DNA of 64,000 bases from Macrostomum hystrix (Eukaryota; Animalia; Platyhelminthes): positions 1,426,001-1,490,000 of the forward strand of contig CATNEN010000012.1 in NCBI GenBank assembly GCA_950097015.1, given 5' to 3'. This document shows positions 1,461-10,847 of this stretch, piece after piece (position 1 is the first letter of the stretch; every line of letters begins with the position of its first letter). Made by a program: the position numbers and the translations under genes. Under the pieces are notes generated by a model. It was not told the origin of the DNA and searched no databases. It saw only the letters and a program-made list of their open reading frames with translations.

Positions 1461-4400
1461 CTAGGAGAGGGTCTCGGCCGCGGTCGCCCAAAGATCCCTG
1501 ACGGCTAGCAGAGCCCAGAGCAGGCAGAGGCGGCAGCGAAGACGCAGCCAGTCGCGCCAGTCGGCGGAGGCCCAACTGTCCGTGGCGAGTGTCCGCAGAC
1601 AGGCCTGAGTGAGCAGGGTGAAAGACAGGCCGGGCCCAAATCTCTGCCGGCCAGTGAGGCGGTGTTCGATGCCACGCAGGAGGTCGTTGGCTTTGAATAG
1701 GAGCAGCATCTGGCGTGGCACCGACTCCAGCACCTGCGTCATCTGCGGCAGGTGACGCCCGGCGTCCGATTGAATCGACTGGTGGGTAATTGGTCATAGG
1801 AGGGCTTTACATTTTGCAAGACCAAAACTACTTTTGATCAGTAGTATATCGAAGACTGAATTAAATGTACGAGCGTAGGTGAGAATTTGGCGACTCAAAC
1901 TACATGGGATGAGAATTTGGCGACTCAAACTACCTGGGGATGAGATTTTGGCGACTCAAACTACCTAGGGATGAGATTTTGGCGACTTAAACTACATGGG
2001 ATGAGATTTTGGCGACTCAAACTACCTGGGGATGAGATTTTGGCGACTCAAACTACATGGGATGAGATTTTGGCGACTCAAACTACCTGGGGATGAGATT
2101 TTGGCGACTCAAACTACCTGTAATGAGATTTTGGCCACTCAAACTACCTGGAATGAGAATTTGGCGACTCAAACTACCTGGGGATGAGATTTTGGCGACT
2201 CAAACTACCTGGGTGAGATTTTGGCGACTCAAACTACCTGGGGTGAGATTTTGGCGACTCAAACTACCTGGGTGAGATTTTGGCGACTCAAACTACCTGG
2301 GTGAGATTTTGGCGACTTAAACTACCTGGGGATGAGATTTTGTCGACTCAAACTACCTAGGGATGAGATTTTGGCGACTCAAACTACATGGGATGAGAAT
2401 TTGGCGACTCAAACTACCTGGGGTGAGATTTTTTGCGACTCAAACTACCTGGGGTGAGATTTTTTGCGACTCAAATTACTTGGGGTGAGATTATGGGGAC
2501 TCAACCTACCTGGGGTGAGATTTTGGCGACTCAAACTACCTGGGGTGAGATTTTTTGCGACTCAAATTACTTGGGGTGAGATTTTGGCGACTCAAACTAC
2601 CTGGGGTGAGATTTTTTGCGACTCAAATTACTTGGGGTGAGATTATGGCGACTCAAACTACCTGGGGTGAGATTTTTTGCGACTCAAATTACTTGGGGTG
2701 AGATTATGGCGACTCAAACTACCTGGGGTGAGATTTTGGCGACTCAAATTGCCTGGCAAAGGGGTCGCACTAATTTACCTGCTCCTCCTCAGCTGAGAAC
2801 TCGCTCTTGCTGACTCCGGCAGACACGGCCGACCAGGAGCGGCCGCTCACCATGCATGCAAAGAGGCCGTACAGCCGGCCGCAGCCGAGGCTGCTAGCGC
2901 TGGCCTGAATGCCCGCCAGATCGCCGTCGATAATTGCGCGCCAAAGGCGGCAGTAGGACAGGCGGAAGTCCGGAGTCAGGCGGCTGTACAGGCCATGATC
3001 TAGCAGTACTAGGCGGACACCTGACCGAATGGATGTGTGAGATGGAGGATTCTGAGCGATACTTATATAGATGTGCTTGGGAATGCTTTGGGAATAGGAT
3101 AGTTCAATGTGTGCTACTGGGTGAATTTCTAATGGGATATTCTTAGAAGGGGCAAAATGCATATTTTAAAGAAGTAAGGTAAGATAGAAAAAATGTCATG
3201 TAAGGATATAAAAGGAAATTTTTATCGCGATCTGGTGAAAAAATATCTCAATGGGTATTTCAAGGAATTTGTAAAAGGAAAATTTCAGGAAAATTTTAAA
3301 AGGGATATTTTTAAGAATAGTAAAAAATAGGTATTTCTAGGAATGGTCAGAGGGATATTTTTGGGAATTTTTAAATAGTGATATTTCTAGTAATAGTAAA
3401 ATGTGATATTTTAAGGAATAGTAAAAGGGCTATTCCTAGAAATAGTAAAATGGGTATTTCTAGGAATAGTAAAATGGGTATTTCTAGGAATAGTAAAATG
3501 GGTATTTCTAGGAATAGTAAAATGGGTATTTCTAGGAATAGTAAAAATGGGTATTTCTAGGAATAGTAAGAGTTATTCCTAGAAATAGTAAAATGGGTAT
3601 TTCTAGGAATAGTAAGAGTCTAGGAACGCATGAACATGTTTCGAGTAATGCAAGATTGACTACTTCAAGCAAAGCCATACGCGGGCATATTCTAAGTAGT
3701 GCTAATTAAATACTTGAAAGTAACTCTAAGGGAAAGTTGCACAGTATTTATGAACGTTATGGGATAATTACTGTCACCAACAGCGGGATAATTATCTAAA
3801 CTGGTTTTGATATTTCTCAAGGTGAAAGTTACACTGGAAACTCACCAGACGGAAGTGCCGGGTCGGGCCGAACCAGCAGATTGCCGGGATGGGGATCGCT
3901 GTGTACAAAGCCGCTGGAGAACATCATGCAGCTATAAAGCTCATTCACCTGCTTAACTATCTGCCATTTGTCAAGCCTGTGAGCTTGAATATAGGCCAAG
4001 TCGTCAATTTGGCCGCCAACGCACATTTCCATGACCAGCACTCGCCTACTGACCAGGCCAGCGATTGGCCGGGGGATCTCCAGCCAGGGAAAGCGGGCGC
4101 AGTACAGGCTCCTAGCCAGCTCCATGTTGCCGGCCTCGGCTGCGAAATCTAGCTCGCGCGGCAGGTTCCGCCTGGTCTCCTCGACTAGCCAGCGGAAGTG
4201 AAAGTCTGAGAATAGGCGGGACACAATGCTAACTAGCCAGTCCATTGTGGCCATGTCTGCCTGGGACCTGGCCAGCACATCCGGGTGCTGCACCTTCACT
4301 GCTACGGCTGTGCCGTCCAGGAGCTGCGCCCGGTGCACCTGCGCCAGAGAGGCAGCGCCGCAGGGCGTGGGTTCGATGCTGAGGAAGATGCTGTCAAACT

Positions 4401-6246
4401 GGATTTACGAGTAGATGGGAGGATAAATTGTGGTTAGATTAGACAAGAGAGGATAATAATAACGTAATTTAGTGCCACAGCCAGCTTCTGTTAAATGGAA
4501 CTTTCCACCCTTTCAAATGGAATTCTCCACTATTTTAAGTTGAAACTTCCACTCTTATAAATGAAAGTTTCCACTCTTTTAAATGGAATTCTCCACTATT
4601 TTAAGTTGAAACTTCCACTCTTATAAATGAAAGTTTCCACTCTTTCAAATGGAATTCTCCACTATTTTAAGTTGAAACTTCCACTCTTATAAATGAAAGT
4701 TTCCACTCTTTTAAATGGAATTCTCCACTATTTTAAGTTGAAACTTCCACTCTTATAAATGAAAGTTTCCACTCTTTTAAATGGAATTCTCCACTATTTT
4801 AAGTTGAAACTTCCACTCTTATAAATGAAAGTTTCCACTCTTTTAAATGGAAGTTTCCACCCTTTTAAATGGAAGTTTCCACCCTTTTAAATGAAACTTT
4901 CCACCCTTTTAAATGAAACTTTCCACTCTTATAAATGAAACTTTCCACTCTTATAAATGAAACTTTCCACTCTTATAAATGGAAGTTTCCACTCTTTTAA
5001 ATGAAACTTTCCACTCTTATAAATGAAACTTTCCACTCTTATAAATGAAACTTTCCACTCTTATAAATGGAAGTTTCCACTCTTATAAATGAAACTTTCC
5101 ACTCTTATAAATGAAACTTTCCACTCTTTTAAATGGAAGTTTCCACTCTTATAAAAGGAAGTTTCCACTATTTTCATAGCAGCTTTCCAATATATTTTAA
5201 AGAAATTACTTTTACTCCTACTCTCTTTCAATGGAACTTTTCGCTCATTGCTTATGGAATTTTCCTCTAGTTTCTGATAGAATTTTCTACGTTTTTACTT
5301 AAATTTACACTATTTTCTATTCGAATTTCGTTCGATTCCTTTGCAATATTAAAACTGCAGGAGGGCTGTAAATCAGGGGGTGGGTGGCAGAGCGGTTGCC
5401 TCTCGCACCAAGGTCCCTAAGTTCGATTCGACGGCGAGGCCACATTTATTTGGGGCGCAGCCGCGGAGAGAAGGCTTGGGGGCTTGTCGTGCAATTTACA
5501 CCCTTGAGGGCCAACCTCCAAGGCACAGTTAAATGTACAAGGCAGATGTACACACCTGTGTGAGCGTGTGCCTGCGTACAGTATCTGTGTGCTCAGGAGT
5601 CATCGAAATGAGCAGAATTGCCTCCTAGCTGGCTGCGGGTCCAGTGTCACTCAATAATGTGCCATTGCCCGCAGCCCTCCAGCAATTATTATTATTATTA
5701 GTAGTAGTAGTAGTAGTATTAGGGCTGTAAATCCGCAAGACGTTGACCTTGAGAGCAATACACAGACAAAGTGCGCGGGATGAGGTGACAGTTGATCAGA
5801 TCGAGTTCGACACTCACTGGCCTGCCAAAGTCCTCCCCGATGACCTGGCGCACCTCGTCAACGGTGGAGGCGGGGGCGTCGCTATGCAGGCGGCCCAGCA
5901 CGCGGGTGTAAGGCTCGGGCAGCAGGTAGTTGAGCGCAGCCAGGTGCTGGCCGACCTTGACAAAGCAGCCGCGGTTCAGGCAGCAGAGCCGGTGCAGCCG
6001 GTTGGCGGAGCGCTCGTGAACCGCGGCGATGACGGCAGCGTAGTCCGGCGAGTCCGCCTGCAGCCCGGCCAGGCTCCATTTGTAGTCGGCGGCGATGCGA
6101 GCCACCGTCAGGCCGGCCCGGCCGAATCGGAGAGCGCCGGCACCCGAGTCAACCAGCTGCTGGCCGGCTTCGGTATTTGACGCAGCGAGGGCCGCGGCAC
6201 CGGCGAATGCGGCACCTGCTGCAAGTAATTTTGTCGGTCGCCGATA
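1461..6246 (-). CDS. ADCK1: aarF-domain (ABC1/UbiB family) atypical kinase 1, about 514 aa, 4 coding exons
   Basis: Exons 6246-5818, 4398-3846, 3020-2779, 1778-1461, all GT-AG and phase-consistent. Motifs: LCCLNRGCFVKVGQHL, AASLAQVHRA, VAVKVQHP, LPRELDF, FVHSDPHPGNLLV, LVLLDHGLY, VPRQMLLLFKANDLLRGIE. No in-frame ATG at the start of the first exon (see findings). Confidence 0.9.
1881..2756. repeat. 31-32 bp minisatellite filling ADCK1 intron 3
   Basis: Unit GATGAGATTTTGGCGACTCAAACTACCTGGG repeated throughout. Confidence 0.95.
3300..3620. repeat. 24 bp minisatellite in ADCK1 intron 2
   Basis: Unit AATAGTAAAATGGGTATTTCTAGG; clean from about 3440, degenerate to the left. Confidence 0.85.
4495..5170. 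repeat. 22 bp minisatellite with a 66 bp higher-order block, ADCK1 intron 1
   Basis: Unit TTCCACTCTTATAAATGAAACT. Three variant 22-mers recur with period 66 (AAATGGAATT at 4515, 4581, ...). Confidence 0.95.
5375..5720 (+). mobile_element. tRNA-derived SINE (family A), near full length, with 13 bp TSD
   Basis: A box GTGGCAGAGCGG, B box GTTCGATTC, body shared with other copies in the window, (ATT)n/(AGT)n tail. TSD AGGGCTGTAAATC at 5362-5374 and 5721-5733. Confidence 0.9.
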
Positions 6247-6267
6247 CTGCAAAATTGATAATTAAAA
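6247..6267 (-). other. 3' splice acceptor at the 5' end of ADCK1 (candidate SL trans-splice site)
   Basis: Minus strand TTTTAATTATCAATTTTGCAG|TAT CGG CGA; phase 0 with the ADCK1 ORF. Confidence 0.6.
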
Positions 6268-6514
6268 CAGAATAAGGATTTTCTTTCGAATCAGTCTATT
6301 CTGTCAGTCACCGTATCTTCAATATTATAGGCGTTGAACATTTGATAACCATTGCTGCGCTGATGTACAGGGAAGCCACTGTCATCTAGTTTTTAGATCT
6401 AGTAATCTAGATCTGTAGTCATCTGGTATTTGGTATCTGGTATTTGGCAGTATATCTGTATTTGGCATCTGGTATCTGTAGTCAGTAGTTAAATCATTTA
6501 GCGCCAGCTCGCAG

Positions 6515-6790
6515 TCTGCACCCACCCCACTCCGCACCCACCTCACTCCACAGTCCGCACTCACCCACTCCGCAGTCCACACCCACCCCACTCCGCAGTC
6601 CGCACCCACCCCACTCCGCATAACGCACCCACCCCAATCCGCAGTCCGCACTCACCGCACTCCGCAGTCCGCACTCACCCACTCCGCAGTCCACACCCAC
6701 CCCACTCTGCAGTCCACACCCACCCCACTCCGCAGTCCGCACCCACCCCACTCCGCATAACGCACCCACCCCAATCCGCAAAGTCATCCG
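6515..6790. repeat. C-rich (G-rich on minus strand) about 23 bp minisatellite upstream of ADCK1
   Basis: Unit CGCACCCACCCCACTCCGCAGTC with length variants. Confidence 0.9.
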
Positions 6791-7578
6791 CATAGATGAC
6801 TAGAACTTAATGCCTATATACTGCCCACCCTGTTTTCTTTACTAACAGCACCCCCGCGCCAGCGGTCGCCTACACACGCCGACCACTTGTTTAAGAGTTT
6901 GGCCTTCGTTACAAGTAAATAAAAAGAAGCTAGAACAACAGAATTTTGCATAAAAAGATTCTGGATAGGTATAATTATGATAAATAGATACTTTGGACCT
7001 ATTCACTTTTTATTGTGTAGCAGGCAGAATACACAGAAGCCATTTTGCACAAAATACGTCAGTCCAGGGCCAAAGTTTCGAGAATATATTACCTCGCAGT
7101 AGTAATAAGAAACTCACAATGAAAGATCAAAACACATGAATTTACAGCCCTATAAATACGAGAGTAATTTCAGTTTTTATAACTCGGATAATTACAAAGA
7201 TAGAGATCAGATGTGAATTAATTACGAAATTCTTCATTTTAGCCACAATATAATGTTGATCAAAGGCCATGAATAAGTTAATAAAAAGTTACTAAATTAA
7301 CATTCGATCAAAAAGTCGTACATATAAAGTAATGCACAGTTTTGGCTGAAAATGTCCTTAACAGATATACACGTGGCACACGCATAAATATGACTGACAT
7401 GCAGGCTACTCGAGATTGTTGTAACTTTTATTTACTTCCGGGATCCACAAAATCAAAGGAAACTGATTGAAGCAACCTATTAAATCACGAGCAAGAAGTT
7501 TTAGAGCAGGAACTTGAGTCGATTATCATTTTTTAGTTTTTTATCCAAATATACTCGAAAAATTAACTAGCACCTACC

Positions 7579-7920
7579 GCTACATATCGGATTAGTTCTG
7601 ATCATCTAGCATCGCTACATATCGGATTAGCTCTGATCATCTAGCATCGTTACATATCGGATTAGCTCTGATCATCTAGCATCGCTATATATCGGATTAG
7701 CTCTGATCATCTAGCATCGCTACATATCGGATTAGCTCTGATCATCTAGCATCGCTATATATCGGATTAGCTCTGATCATCTAGCATCGCTACATATCGG
7801 ATTAGCTCTGATCATCTAGCATCGCTACATATCGGATTAGCTCTGATCATCTAGCATCGCTACATATCGGATTAGCTCTGATCATCTAGCATCGCTACAT
7901 ATCGGATTAGCTCTGATCAT
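7579..7920. repeat. 35 bp minisatellite (about 10 copies) between TMEM192-like and ADCK1
   Basis: Unit GCTACATATCGGATTAGCTCTGATCATCTAGCATC. Confidence 0.95.
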
Positions 7921-8107
7921 CATGCATTACTGCATATTGGGCTAAGAATATAATAGCAAAGATTTAAATGTTTGACGCTAAAAGACCAAAGACAGGCCAG
8001 TGATGCGTGATCCTCATTGTACAGGCAAGTGCTGATATTGGTGCATATGGTTTGATAAGAGCCCTTGTCCCTACAACAGGAACCCTGGAGTCGCTAAGCG
8101 AAACAGT

Positions 8108-10847
8108 TCAAGCAACAGGGTGTTGCTCCAGCAGCTCTCTTTGCCTATGCATAAGTTCTTGTTCGACTCGATAAACTCGTCTTGTAAGGCGACTATTGCG
8201 CAATCTCAGGTAGCCAATCAGAGAAGCCTGTTTAGCCAGGAGCTCGTCCATTGGATGCTGCTGCTGTTGCTGACCGGGCTGAGATAACTGACGACTTAAC
8301 CGTCTAGAACTAGACTGTCGATCATTGAAGGAGCCGATGTCTGCTACATTGAGTCTACCAGAGTTGGCCAAGTGTTCGAAGCCAGCAAACTCATCGGACT
8401 GCTGAGCATCCGGCTCGGATTCTTGTTCGACAGCAGCTGCCGAATTCGACTGGCCCTCCGAGTAGGCGTCGGGAGCGGGTGAGGCGGCCACCGCCGATCT
8501 CAGACGCCGCAGTAGCAGCCACAACAGCAGGCCGGTATAGGCGACTGACTCGCAGGCGATAATCAGCATTGCCAGGTGCTGCGGATGCAGCGGGCCGAGG
8601 CAAGCGCCGCCGCCGTCGACATTAGCGACTTCGTCCGGGCAGAGCGATGCGCATAGGCTGAGAACCGCTGACAGACAGGCTGTGACTGGAATTCGGAGTT
8701 GTACATAACTGAAGGTGAGAGAGGCACAGAACTGAAGGTGAGAGGCACAGAACTGAAGGTGAGAGAGGCACAGAACTGAAAGTGAGAGAGGTACAGAACT
8801 GAAGGTGAGAGAGGCACAGAACTGAAGGTGAGAGAGGCACAGAACTGAAGGTGAGAGAGGCACAGAACTGAAGGTGAGAGAGGCACAGAACTGAAAGTGA
8901 GAGAGGCACAGAACTGAAGGTGAGAGAGGTACATAACTGAAGGTGAGAGAGGCACATAACTGAAGGTGAGAGAGGTACATAACTGAAGGTGAGAGAGGTA
9001 CATAACTGAAGGTGAGAGAGGCACAGAACTGAAGGTGAGAGAGGTACAGAACTGAAGGTGAGAGAGGCACATAACTGAAGGTGAGAGAGGTACATAACTG
9101 AAGGTGAGAGAGGCACAGAACTGAAGGTGAGAGAGGCACGGAACTGAAGGTGAGAGAGGTACATAACTGAAGGTGAGAGAGGTACATAACTGAAGGTGAG
9201 AGAGGCACAGAACTGAAGGTGAGAGAGGTACAGAACTGAAGGTGAGAGAGGTACATAACTGAAGGTGAGAGAGGCACAGAACTGAAGGTGAGAGAGGCAC
9301 GGAACTGAAGGTGAGAGAGGTACATAACTGAAGGTGAGAGAGGCACAGAACTGAAGGTGAGAGAGGCACAGAACTGAAGGTGAGAGAGGCACAGAACTGA
9401 AGGTGAGAGAGGCACAGAACTGAAAGTGAGAGAGGCACAGAACTGAAGGTGAGAGAGGTACATAACTGAAGGTGAGAGAGGCACATAACTGAAGGTGAGA
9501 GAGGCACAGAACTGAAGGTGAGAGAGGCACAGAACTGAAAGTGAGAGAGACACAGAACTGAAGGTGAGAGAGGCACAGAATTGTGTCGGACTCACAGCAG
9601 GCGCAGGCGATAAACGGAGCCCGAGCCCAGGGCAGGCAGCGCTGGGCCACTCGCAGATAGCCAGTAAGGGTCATCCTGCGGCAGAACCACAACAAGCAGC
9701 GCTGGCAGGTCAGAGCCAGGCAGAACTGCAGACAGTGAACGCAGGCCACGTACGCCAGTTGAAGACGCCAGGCGCAAAGCGGCTCCTCGCTGTAAGGCGA
9801 AACGTCTGCAGTGGTGTTGACGAGTCGCCGCAGCCAGGCGGCTATGGCGCCGCAGCTGTAGGGCAGCCAGAAGTGAAATGAGGCCAGCAGGAGCTGCGGG
9901 TTGCAATTAGTGCTGTTACAATGGGCGTTTGGAGCTTCTTTGATGAGCCGCCGCCAAAACCTAACCCCGAAATGGGTTCTTTGATGAGCCGCCGCCAATA
10001 CCCCCCGAGATGGGTTCTTTGATGAGCCGCCGCCAATACCCCCCGAGATGGGTTCTTTGATGAGCCGCCGCCAATACCCCCCGAGATGGGTTCTTTGATG
10101 AGCCGCCGCCAATACCCCCCGAGATGGGTTCTTTGATGAGCCGCCGCCAATACCCCCCCCGAGATGGGTTCTTTGATGAGCCGCCGCCAATACCCCCCGG
10201 AGTGGGTTCTTTGATGAGCCGCCGCCAATACCTACCAAGATAGGTTCTTTGATGAGCCGCCGCCAATACCTACTGAGATGGGTTCTTTGATGAACCGCCG
10301 CCAATACCCTCCCGAGATAGGTTCTTTGATGAGCCGCCGCCAATACTCCCCACAATGGTTCTTTGATAAGCAACCGCCAATCCTAACGACAAAGCTCTTT
10401 GATGAGCCACCGCAAAAAATGGCTACTTACATAAAGTACCAATGATGCAAGGCAGAAGCAGATGCAGAACAGGTCAGGCCGCCGTTTTCTAAACTGTCTG
10501 CAGCAACAGCAGCAGCGGCTGCAATAGTGTTGATTTGACTCATCTTCGGCATCGTCATCAGCTAGAAAGCGGCGTTCGCGATGGCCAGGACTGAAGCGGA
10601 TGCGATAAGTTCGGGCCTGACCTGGTGGCAGCAACGGAGCATTTGCCGCAGTCGCATTGTCGCCCTCCTCGCCGTAGCCGCCAGCGCTAGTCGAACTGAA
10701 AAAGTCGATATCGTCGCCATTAGCGACGTTGCTTATAGGAAGCGTTGGCGGCTGCCGCTGCTGCTGCGGCAACATCGGCGGAGAACTGTCGCCAGATCCC
10801 GCAGCGGCTGCCGCTTTTAGCGAAGACTGAAAATTTATATGCGACAT
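8108..10847 (-). CDS. TMEM192: TMEM192-like multi-pass (lysosomal-type) membrane protein, about 430 aa, 3 coding exons
   Basis: Exons 10847-10431, 9893-9596, 8685-8108, GT-AG and phase-consistent, encoding about four hydrophobic segments. ...TGYLRV..., ...SPAPDA... and the C-terminal ELLAKQASLIGYLRLRNSRLTRRV resemble the TMEM192 C-terminal coiled coil (EKQxDxIEYLKRHNxLLSKRL), by recalled similarity only. Confidence 0.62.
8708..9580. repeat. 23 bp minisatellite filling TMEM192-like intron 2
   Basis: Unit ACTGAAGGTGAGAGAGGCACAGA. Confidence 0.97.
9935..10410. repeat. 38 bp minisatellite filling TMEM192-like intron 1
   Basis: Unit GGGTTCTTTGATGAGCCGCCGCCAATACCCCCCGAGAT (period 38 at 9974, 10012, 10050). 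Confidence 0.95.

What the first reader, a model, noticed from the sequence alone, without database searches (positions are those of the whole stretch)
5818..6267. ADCK1 appears to have no start codon of its own: candidate SL-donated initiator AUG
Seen: the first ADCK1 exon starts at a good acceptor (TTTTGCAG|, 6247) and reads in phase 0 as YRRPTKLLAAGAAFAGAAALAAS..., with no in-frame ATG in this exon. The four exons already give about 514 codons, near full ADCK1 length. Known: flatworm spliced leaders end in a conserved AUG that can serve as the initiator Met. Inference: SL trans-splicing gives M-YRRPTKLLAAG..., a basic, non-acidic N-terminus suited to mitochondrial import, so translation would depend on trans-splicing. 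Alternative seen: a weak cis exon ATG...ACG|GTGACT (6341-6312, MFNAYNIEDT) with a 65-nt intron, shorter than any other host-gene intron here (80 nt or more) and with a non-consensus +5 base.
Basis: partly seen in the sequence, partly recalled or inferred. Interest (0 to 1): 0.75.

Follow-up and report, generated by a model that had tools for sequence, protein, structure and literature searches.

The report
Spliced leader supplies ADCK1 start codon
In this Macrostomum flatworm the mitochondrial-kinase-like gene ADCK1 has no start codon in its own DNA, and assembled transcripts show the trans-spliced leader, which ends in AUG, joined exactly in front of codon 2; this mechanism is already known in flatworms, so this is one more confirmed case.

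Summary
The window belongs to the Macrostomum hystrix assembly (220,453,370 bp, 42 contigs). A four-exon ADCK1 gene lies on the minus strand (6246..1461, 513 codons plus stop). It begins at the acceptor TTGCAG|TATCGG. An in-frame TAA lies 18 nt upstream, and there is no in-frame ATG before codon 192, which is past the KxGQ motif and the VAVK lysine.

The genome carries the exact 35-nt M. lignano spliced leader, which ends in ATG and sits in canonical SL RNA genes. One spliced transcript contig from a public run joins the leader to base 6246, giving AUG-UAU-CGG (M-Y-R-R-P-T-K-L). That Met falls where mite and whale ADCK1 start (MLRRATKL, MARRALKL).

All five M. lignano copies keep the homologous acceptor (TTGCAG|CATCAC), phase 0, with no ATG. 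GenBank lists two as "partial" and three as truncated at an internal Met.

A second contig uses an acceptor 28 nt downstream, where the leader AUG is out of frame (37-codon ORF). The proposed cis mini-exon has no transcript support.

Translation itself is inferred, not shown. The mechanism has been known since Cheng et al. 2006, and this scan has flagged similar candidates for other genes of this genome, one confirmed in follow-up. It is a new member of a known kind, of modest interest.

The parts
6247..6252 (-). Trans-splice acceptor TTGCAG (AG at 6248-6247); the leader is joined to base 6246
   Evidence: Sequence. It fits the M. lignano trans-acceptor motif [T/C]TNCAG (PMC8629364). The X2 contig carries the SL 3' end directly upstream of 6246. 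It is homologous to TTGCAG|CATC in M. lignano.
5818..6246 (-). ADCK1 coding exon 1 (143 codons, codons 2-144 of the protein once the leader AUG is added); contains the KVGQ (KxGQ) motif; no Met
   Evidence: It is 77-80% identical to the M. lignano orthologue. Contigs of X2, X3 and X4 join 5818 to 4398.
6262..6264 (-). In-frame TAA upstream of the acceptor, which closes the frame in genomic DNA
6219..6224 (-). Alternative trans-splice acceptor TTGCAG inside exon 1. The leader is joined to 6218, the leader AUG is out of frame (+1), and the ORF is 37 codons
   Evidence: X3 contig; frame and ORF computed
3846..4398 (-). ADCK1 exon 2 (ABC1 domain, SLAQVH, VAVKVQHP lysine, first internal Met at residue 192)
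   Evidence: the junction with exon 1 is seen in three contigs
2779..3020 (-). ADCK1 exon 3 (end of the ABC1 domain, LLDHG)
1461..1778 (-). ADCK1 exon 4 with stop TAG at 1463-1461
6312..6341 (-). Candidate cis mini-exon (ATG...ACG|GTGACT, MFNAYNIEDT) proposed as an alternative; not supported by transcripts
   Evidence: No contig depth anywhere in 6248-6540. An in-phase ATG..GT[AG]A combination occurs in 40% of shuffled upstream regions.
8108..8686 (-). Last coding exon of the upstream same-strand neighbour, a TMEM192-like gene (possible operon partner)
   Evidence: Pfam TMEM192, E 5.1e-07. It is 59% identical to the TMEM192 part of M. lignano A0A1I8HDE2. The gene order is the same in M. lignano loci.

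Best explanation
ADCK1 of this Macrostomum hystrix genome is made translatable by spliced-leader trans-splicing. The pre-mRNA has no initiator codon. The spliceosome removes the outron upstream of the TTGCAG acceptor at 6252-6247 and joins the SL exon (...AAUUUAUUGCAUG) to base 6246. The last three leader bases become codon 1, so the protein starts M-Y-R-R-P-T-K-L-L-A-A-G. That gives a short basic stretch and then an Ala/Gly-rich hydrophobic segment, as in other ADCK1 proteins. Shown here: the genomic anatomy, the SL RNA genes, the SL-exon junction in RNA-derived contigs, conservation of the acceptor and its phase in M. lignano, and the match of the leader Met to the start of other animals' ADCK1. 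Inferred: that ribosomes start at this AUG (shown for Schistosoma SL mRNAs by Cheng et al. 2006, as cited in PMC9851317 and PMC12582326), and that the gene may be the downstream member of a TMEM192-ADCK1 operon.
For: 1. No genomic start: in-frame TAA at 6264-6262, no Met in exon 1, and the first Met at residue 192, after KVGQ (97), SLAQVH (160) and VAVKVQHP (175).
2. The leader exists and ends in ATG. There are 23 exact copies of the published 35-nt M. lignano SL. Some lie in ~11.6-kb tandem arrays and are followed by GTAAGA, an Sm-like AUAUUUUUAG and hairpins.
3. The X2 contig reads ...CTGCGAAGACTCAATTTATTGCATG|TATCGGCGACC, which is an exact SL-to-6246 junction. The same contigs skip intron 1 (5818 joined to 4398), so they derive from RNA.
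4. The acceptor fits the trans-acceptor motif [T/C]TNCAG.
5. All five M. lignano copies have ccttgcag|CATCAC in phase 0, an in-frame stop 24-36 nt upstream, and no ATG. GenBank PAA53755.1 begins HHRR... exactly at the acceptor and is flagged 'partial'.
6. In alignment A1, mite MLRRATKL and whale MARRALKL place their Met exactly where the leader AUG sits before YRRPTKL. The paralogue on contig C33 has its own ATG within 3 residues of that point.
Against: Only one contig (X2) shows the in-frame junction. A contig from another run of the same study (X3) shows the leader at 6218, out of frame, so acceptor choice is not uniform and the productive fraction is unknown. Contigs drop rare variants, so a minor cis-spliced isoform cannot be excluded. 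The runs are not on record as RNA; their RNA origin is inferred from splicing. No ribosome-profiling or proteomic evidence was available. The leader AUG has U at -3, which is a weak context by vertebrate rules.
Confidence: 0.85

Rival explanations
1. A cis-spliced mini-exon (6341-6312, MFNAYNIEDT, 65-nt intron) supplies the start codon, at least in a share of transcripts. The SL-joined form would then be one of two isoforms.
For: The ATG, open frame, phase-0 GTGACT donor and 65-nt spacing exist. M. lignano has an analogous in-phase ATG..GTAACG combination 62 nt upstream of its acceptor. The similar spacing in two species is somewhat more than expected by chance.
Against: No contig depth anywhere in 6248-6540, and the X2 contig runs from exon 1 straight into the leader. 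The two species' mini-exon peptides are unrelated (MFNAYNIEDT vs MRSPGSGKGHTRPNQ). In the alignment the M. hystrix ATG faces AGG in M. lignano. Both donors deviate from GT[G/A]AG at +5. 40-46% of shuffled upstream regions give such a combination. A 10-15 residue extension would break the exact match to the M-x-R-R start of other ADCK1 proteins. The M. lignano gene model starts at the acceptor.
Confidence: 0.07
2. The gene model is incomplete: a more distant upstream exon, or read-through from the TMEM192-like neighbour, provides the real N-terminus, as in the fused 815-aa UniProt model of M. lignano.
For: UniProt A0A1I8HDE2 (P0159) fuses TMEM192 and ABC1 domains. The neighbour is on the same strand, 1.86 kb upstream.
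Against: The TMEM192-like ORF ends in TGA at 8110-8108. The SL junction at 6246 shows a separate mature mRNA. The N-terminus aligns end-to-end with complete ADCK1 proteins of 503-531 aa. The newer GenBank annotation of M. lignano keeps the two genes apart.
Confidence: 0.03
3. The leader AUG is not used. Translation starts at the first internal AUG (codon 192), as three GenBank models of M. lignano assume (324-aa proteins), or the locus gives little or no protein.
For: P0152 (PAA54999.1 and others) is annotated from MATMDWL.... One contig shows an out-of-frame leader junction.
Against: A product starting at Met192 would lack the conserved KxGQ region, SLAQVH and the VAVK lysine. Exon 1 is 77-80% identical in protein between the two species with the frame intact, which indicates it is translated.
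Confidence: 0.03

Closest known systems
Schistosoma mansoni mRNAs that need the SL 3'-terminal AUG as initiator (Cheng, Cohen, Ndegwa & Davis 2006, J Biol Chem 281:733; cited in PMC9851317, PMC12582326, PMC5832876)
   Same: The flatworm SL ends in AUG. The leader is spliced in frame directly before the ORF, and the recipient has no usable start of its own. PMC9851317 reports that the leader AUG is in frame in 28% of trans-spliced S. mansoni transcripts and that more than 40 cDNAs require it.
   Different: A free-living macrostomorph rather than a parasitic trematode, with a different SL sequence. Here translation is inferred, not assayed. An out-of-frame alternative acceptor 28 nt downstream is also used.
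M. lignano ADCK1 orthologues PAA53755.1 / PAA74449.1 ('partial') and PAA54999.1 (324 aa)
   Same: Homologous TTGCAG|YATC acceptor, phase 0, no genomic ATG, TMEM192-like gene upstream, ~80% identity in exon 1.
   Different: The residues right after the acceptor have diverged (HHRRAVAVAVTAAAA vs YRRPTKLLAAGAAF). I did not see M. lignano SL junction reads; I infer them from the gene model starting at the acceptor.
slORFs (ORFs created by SL addition; slORFfinder, PMC9851317)
   Same: The start codon is supplied by the leader.
   Different: Here the leader AUG opens the conserved, canonical ORF of an ancient gene, not a novel or alternative ORF. The out-of-frame 37-codon ORF from the 6218 acceptor is the slORF-like by-product.
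POLR3K of the same genome
   Same: Same genome, same leader, and the same conclusion from assembled transcripts.
   Different: A different gene. I did not re-test that case.

Membership tests
Flatworm mRNAs dependent on the SL 3'-terminal AUG (Cheng et al. 2006 class) | The organism has an SL RNA whose exon ends in AUG followed by a GU donor | tested here: met
   Exact 35-nt SL ...TTGCATG|GTAAGA, an Sm-like site and hairpins, in tandem arrays. The sequence is as published for M. lignano.
Flatworm mRNAs dependent on the SL 3'-terminal AUG (Cheng et al. 2006 class) | The SL is found joined to this mRNA at the proposed acceptor | tested here: met
   X2 contig: 24 loose SL letters plus a shared G, then 6246 onward. 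The contig is spliced at intron 1. This rests on one contig only.
Flatworm mRNAs dependent on the SL 3'-terminal AUG (Cheng et al. 2006 class) | The SL AUG is in frame with the conserved ORF, with no stop between | tested here: met
   AUG-UAU-CGG..., 144 codons open to the end of exon 1. The phase is conserved in five M. lignano copies.
Flatworm mRNAs dependent on the SL 3'-terminal AUG (Cheng et al. 2006 class) | No alternative in-frame AUG that could give a functional protein | tested here: met
   The first Met is at residue 192, after the KxGQ and VAVK motifs. There is an in-frame TAA upstream.
Flatworm mRNAs dependent on the SL 3'-terminal AUG (Cheng et al. 2006 class) | Translation demonstrably initiates at the SL AUG | not testable with these tools
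   No ribosome profiling or proteomics is available. Indirect support only: the homologues' Met aligns to that position.
ADCK1 (UbiB/ABC1 atypical kinase-like family) | ABC1 domain (PF03109) with the N-terminal KxGQ motif and the conserved lysine | tested here: met
   PF03109, E 4.8e-57. KVGQ at residue 97 and VAVKVQHP at 175.
ADCK1 (UbiB/ABC1 atypical kinase-like family) | Closest named relatives are ADCK1 rather than other ADCK paralogues | tested here: met
   The M. lignano orthologue's best named hits are 'aarF domain-containing protein kinase 1' at 44-51% identity across Metazoa. The second ABC1 gene of this genome is only 36-37% identical.
Downstream gene of an SL-resolved operon (criterion of PMC8629364: same strand, repeat-adjusted gap under 1 kb) | Same-strand upstream gene at a repeat-adjusted distance below 1 kb | tested here: inconclusive
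   The TMEM192-like gene ends at 8108 and the gap is 1861 nt. Subtracting 621 nt of tandem repeats leaves ~1.24 kb here, against ~0.98 kb in M. lignano L014. The 3'UTR end is unknown and no pre-mRNA evidence is available.

The most novel reading that the evidence does not exclude
Because the leader carries the only usable AUG, the choice between two TTGCAG trans-acceptors 28 nt apart would act as an on/off switch for ADCK1 protein. The acceptor at 6246 is in frame. The one at 6218 is out of frame and gives a 37-codon dead-end ORF. The switch would be used differently between samples (X2 vs X3) and may be mirrored in M. lignano, where one gene model starts 16-18 nt inside the exon.
Probability: 0.1. 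Interest if true: 0.55.

Novelty: new member of a known kind. Interest (0 to 1): 0.3.

Why it matters
This case gives transcript-level confirmation that a conserved gene for a mitochondrial kinase-like protein depends entirely on trans-splicing for its start codon in a free-living, early-branching flatworm. The arrangement is conserved between two Macrostomum species.

The practical consequence is for annotation. Pipelines that trim the leader or demand a genomic ATG produce 'partial' entries (PAA53755.1, PAA74449.1), entries truncated by 190 residues (PAA54999.1), or fusions with the upstream gene (A0A1I8HDE2). The M. hystrix genome paper itself notes that the terminal ATG complicates annotation (PMC10468722).

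It also bears on transgene and knock-in design in Macrostomum models. It adds no new mechanism.

Tried and rejected
- **Word search with exon 1.** It returned only one unrelated eukaryotic fragment from a metagenome (P0001). The length window excludes full-length relatives, so the blank is uninformative.
- **Word search with the M. lignano orthologue.** It confirmed ADCK1 orthology but returned no transcriptome-derived Macrostomum proteins. A wider cross-species test of the N-terminus was therefore not possible.
- **Pfam on exons 1 and 4.** No hit.
- **Rfam on the SL RNA loci.** No SL family hit, only U1.
- **The look-up of sequencing runs.** No run is on record as RNA. I inferred RNA origin from intron-less, SL-bearing contigs. 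Only contigs were available, not raw reads, so isoform ratios, read counts and true 5' ends could not be measured. The single read-laying run was limited to 5735-6540 to avoid the long tandem repeats, so the other introns were not checked with transcripts.
- **Operon reading.** Considered but left open.
- **Cis mini-exon.** Considered in detail and judged unlikely.
- **Mitochondrial targeting of the N-terminus.** Not tested beyond a hydropathy scan.

Full report
**What is in the sequence**

On the minus strand, a four-exon gene runs from 6246 to 1461. The exons are 6246-5818, 4398-3846, 3020-2779 and 1778-1461. All introns have AG acceptors and GTGAGT or GTAAAT donors. The spliced frame is 1542 nt, which is 513 codons plus TAG.

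Exons 2 and 3 match Pfam ABC1 (PF03109, E 4.8e-57 and 2.4e-06). The first exon starts right after ttatcaattttgcAG and reads YRRPTKLLAAGAAFAGAAALAAS... The frame is closed by TAA at 6264-6262 with no ATG between.

Exon 1 contains no Met at all. The first Met of the spliced protein is residue 192. That is after KVGQ (97), SLAQVH (160) and VAVKVQHP (175), so a start there would delete conserved parts of the domain.

**Which organism, and does it have an AUG-ending leader**

The window's genome has 220,453,370 bases in 42 contigs. These are exactly the figures given for the Macrostomum hystrix assembly in Table 1 of PMC10468722.

The 35-nt spliced leader published for M. lignano is CGGTCTCTTACTGCGAAGACTCAATTTATTGCATG (PMC8629364). 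It occurs here in 23 exact copies, and the reversed control pattern gives none. Many copies lie in tandem arrays with a period of about 11.6 kb on contigs 15, 17 and 42.

In the array unit the leader is followed by GTAAGACACCG, a small hairpin, AUAUUUUUAG (Sm-like) and a further hairpin. The 111-nt RNA folds with z = -3.1. This is the anatomy described for the M. lignano SL RNA gene. [quoted passage not shown]

**Transcript evidence**

I laid the contigs of four of them on 5735-6540.

Three contigs (X2, X3, X4; one organism, one study) end their match at 5818. They continue with 30 letters that are the reverse complement of the first 30 bases of exon 2 at 4398. They lack the 1.4-kb intron 1, so they come from RNA.

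The X2 contig covers the whole of exon 1. Beyond 6247 it continues with 24 letters whose reverse complement is CTGCGAAGACTCAATTTATTGCAT. The next leader base, G, coincides with the genomic G of the AG. The transcript therefore reads ...TTGCATG|TATCGGCGACCG, and translation from the leader AUG gives MYRRPTKLLAAG..., open through exon 1.

No contig has any depth in 6248-6540, which includes the proposed mini-exon.

There the leader is joined to 6218, behind a second TTGCAG (6224-6219) that lies inside exon 1. The leader AUG is then in the +1 frame and opens a 37-codon ORF that ends in TGA.

Both acceptors fit the trans-acceptor motif [T/C]TNCAG reported for M. lignano. Because these are contigs, the relative use of the two sites cannot be measured.

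**Comparative evidence**

A full HMMER search with exon 1 found one close relative, P0002 (80% identity, E 2.9e-59). It is GenBank PAA74449.1 of M. lignano, labelled "partial". Its cluster mate PAA53755.1 (P0153, also "partial") begins HHRRAVAVAVT... without Met. A third entry (P0152, 324 aa) starts at the internal MATMDWL.

I fetched the five M. lignano loci. In every one the exon begins behind ccttgcAG|CATCACCGC in phase 0, with an in-frame stop 24-36 nt upstream, no ATG in between, and no Met in the first 140 codons. In L015 the annotated gene starts at the very first base after the AG. This is expected from the annotation pipeline, which set gene boundaries by SL-read peaks (PMC5730564).

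In a DNA alignment the motif TTGCAG|YATC is shared by the two species, while the outron is not alignable with confidence.

At the protein level, complete ADCK1 proteins of a mite (MLRRATKL...) and of whales (MARRALKL...) place their own Met exactly one residue before the position of Y1 of this exon. That is where the leader AUG sits. The second ABC1 gene of this genome (contig 33) has its own ATG within three residues of that point. No N-terminal coding sequence appears to be missing.

**The rival mini-exon**

An in-phase ATG...GT[AG]A combination upstream of the acceptor exists here (donor at -65). Curiously, one also exists in M. lignano (donor at -62). Such a combination arises in 40-46% of shuffled upstream regions, although the similar spacing in the two species is a little more than chance would suggest.

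Several points count against it:
- The two peptides are unrelated.
- Both donors miss the +5 G of the GT[G/A]AG consensus.
- The extension would spoil the exact M-x-R-R start shared with other ADCK1 proteins.
- No contig supports it.

I keep it as a minor possibility (about 7%), perhaps as a rare isoform.

**Mechanism**

The best-supported account has the following steps:
- The ADCK1 pre-mRNA is transcribed from an unknown start, possibly together with the TMEM192-like gene that ends at 8108 on the same strand. The two genes are neighbours in the same order in all M. lignano loci that reach far enough upstream, and they are fused in one UniProt model.
- The outron is removed by SL trans-splicing at 6247|6246.
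- The leader provides the cap, a 32-nt 5'UTR and the initiator AUG.

The junction is shown. Initiation at that AUG is inferred from three things: frame conservation, the alignment to other ADCK1 starts, and the Schistosoma precedent (Cheng et al. 2006, cited).

The operon reading is open. The repeat-adjusted gap is about 1.24 kb here and about 0.98 kb in M. lignano, against the published 1-kb threshold.

**Comparison with what is known, and novelty**

That the flatworm SL's 3'-terminal AUG can serve as initiator Met has been established since 2006. By PMC9851317's account of that work, the leader AUG is in frame in 28% of trans-spliced S. mansoni transcripts and more than 40 cDNAs need it.

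This scan has flagged the same situation for seven other genes of this genome, and one (POLR3K) was confirmed in the same way. I did not re-test those.

The ADCK1 case is therefore a new member of a known kind. Three things go slightly beyond the routine:
- The arrangement is conserved between two Macrostomum species.
- Public annotation is visibly affected ("partial", truncated and fused entries).
- The second acceptor is out of frame. With a leader that carries the only AUG, that turns acceptor choice into a choice between a translatable and an untranslatable mRNA. I rate a regulatory role for this at about 10%.

**Limits**

There is one contig per junction, from one study. There are no raw reads, no counts and no translation data. 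No other flatworm beyond M. lignano could be examined. Mitochondrial targeting of the N-terminus was not tested; the hydropathy scan only shows a basic start followed by an Ala/Gly-rich hydrophobic stretch.

Noticed in passing
G000 contigs 15, 17, 42; locus L005:1425-2000: SL RNA genes lie in tandem arrays of about 11.6 kb period. A complete U1 snRNA gene (Rfam RF00003, 151.7 bits) sits about 300 nt from the SL RNA gene on the same strand of the array unit.
   Followed up: partly
Loci L002, L003, L004 (contigs 3 and 7), around position 1500: Dispersed exact SL copies are followed by unrelated sequence instead of the GTAAGA donor. They still share about 10 nt (GCCGTAAAGA) upstream of the published 35-nt leader with the true SL RNA genes. 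They look like retroposed trans-spliced mRNAs and suggest the real leader is at least ~45 nt long.
   Followed up: partly
window 8108-10847, minus strand: The upstream same-strand neighbour is a TMEM192-like gene (Pfam PF14802; 59% identical to the M. lignano protein). The TMEM192-ADCK1 order is conserved in M. lignano, and the two are fused in UniProt A0A1I8HDE2. This is a candidate operon.
   Followed up: partly
window 6218-6224, minus strand: A second TTGCAG trans-acceptor lies inside exon 1 and is used in one run's contig. It gives an out-of-frame leader AUG and a 37-codon ORF. In M. lignano locus L014 the annotated coding range starts 18 nt inside the exon, which may reflect a similar downstream acceptor.
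   Followed up: partly
window 6205: Contigs of X2 and X3 read A instead of G on the plus strand. This is TTC to TTT, a synonymous Phe change in the ADCK1 frame, and is probably a strain polymorphism.
   Followed up: no
window 4500-5200, 1900-2760, 3300-3650, 6531-6780, 7578-7921: The ADCK1 introns and the upstream intergenic region are largely filled with long tandem arrays. Upstream, the periods are 23 and 35 nt. The intron arrays were seen by eye. M. lignano has a different 16-nt array at the equivalent upstream place.
   Followed up: no
window 5400-5480, minus strand: Intron 1 contains a stretch that looks tRNA-like by eye (ggcctcgccgtcgaatcgaac...). It is possibly a tRNA-derived SINE. It was not examined.
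   Followed up: no
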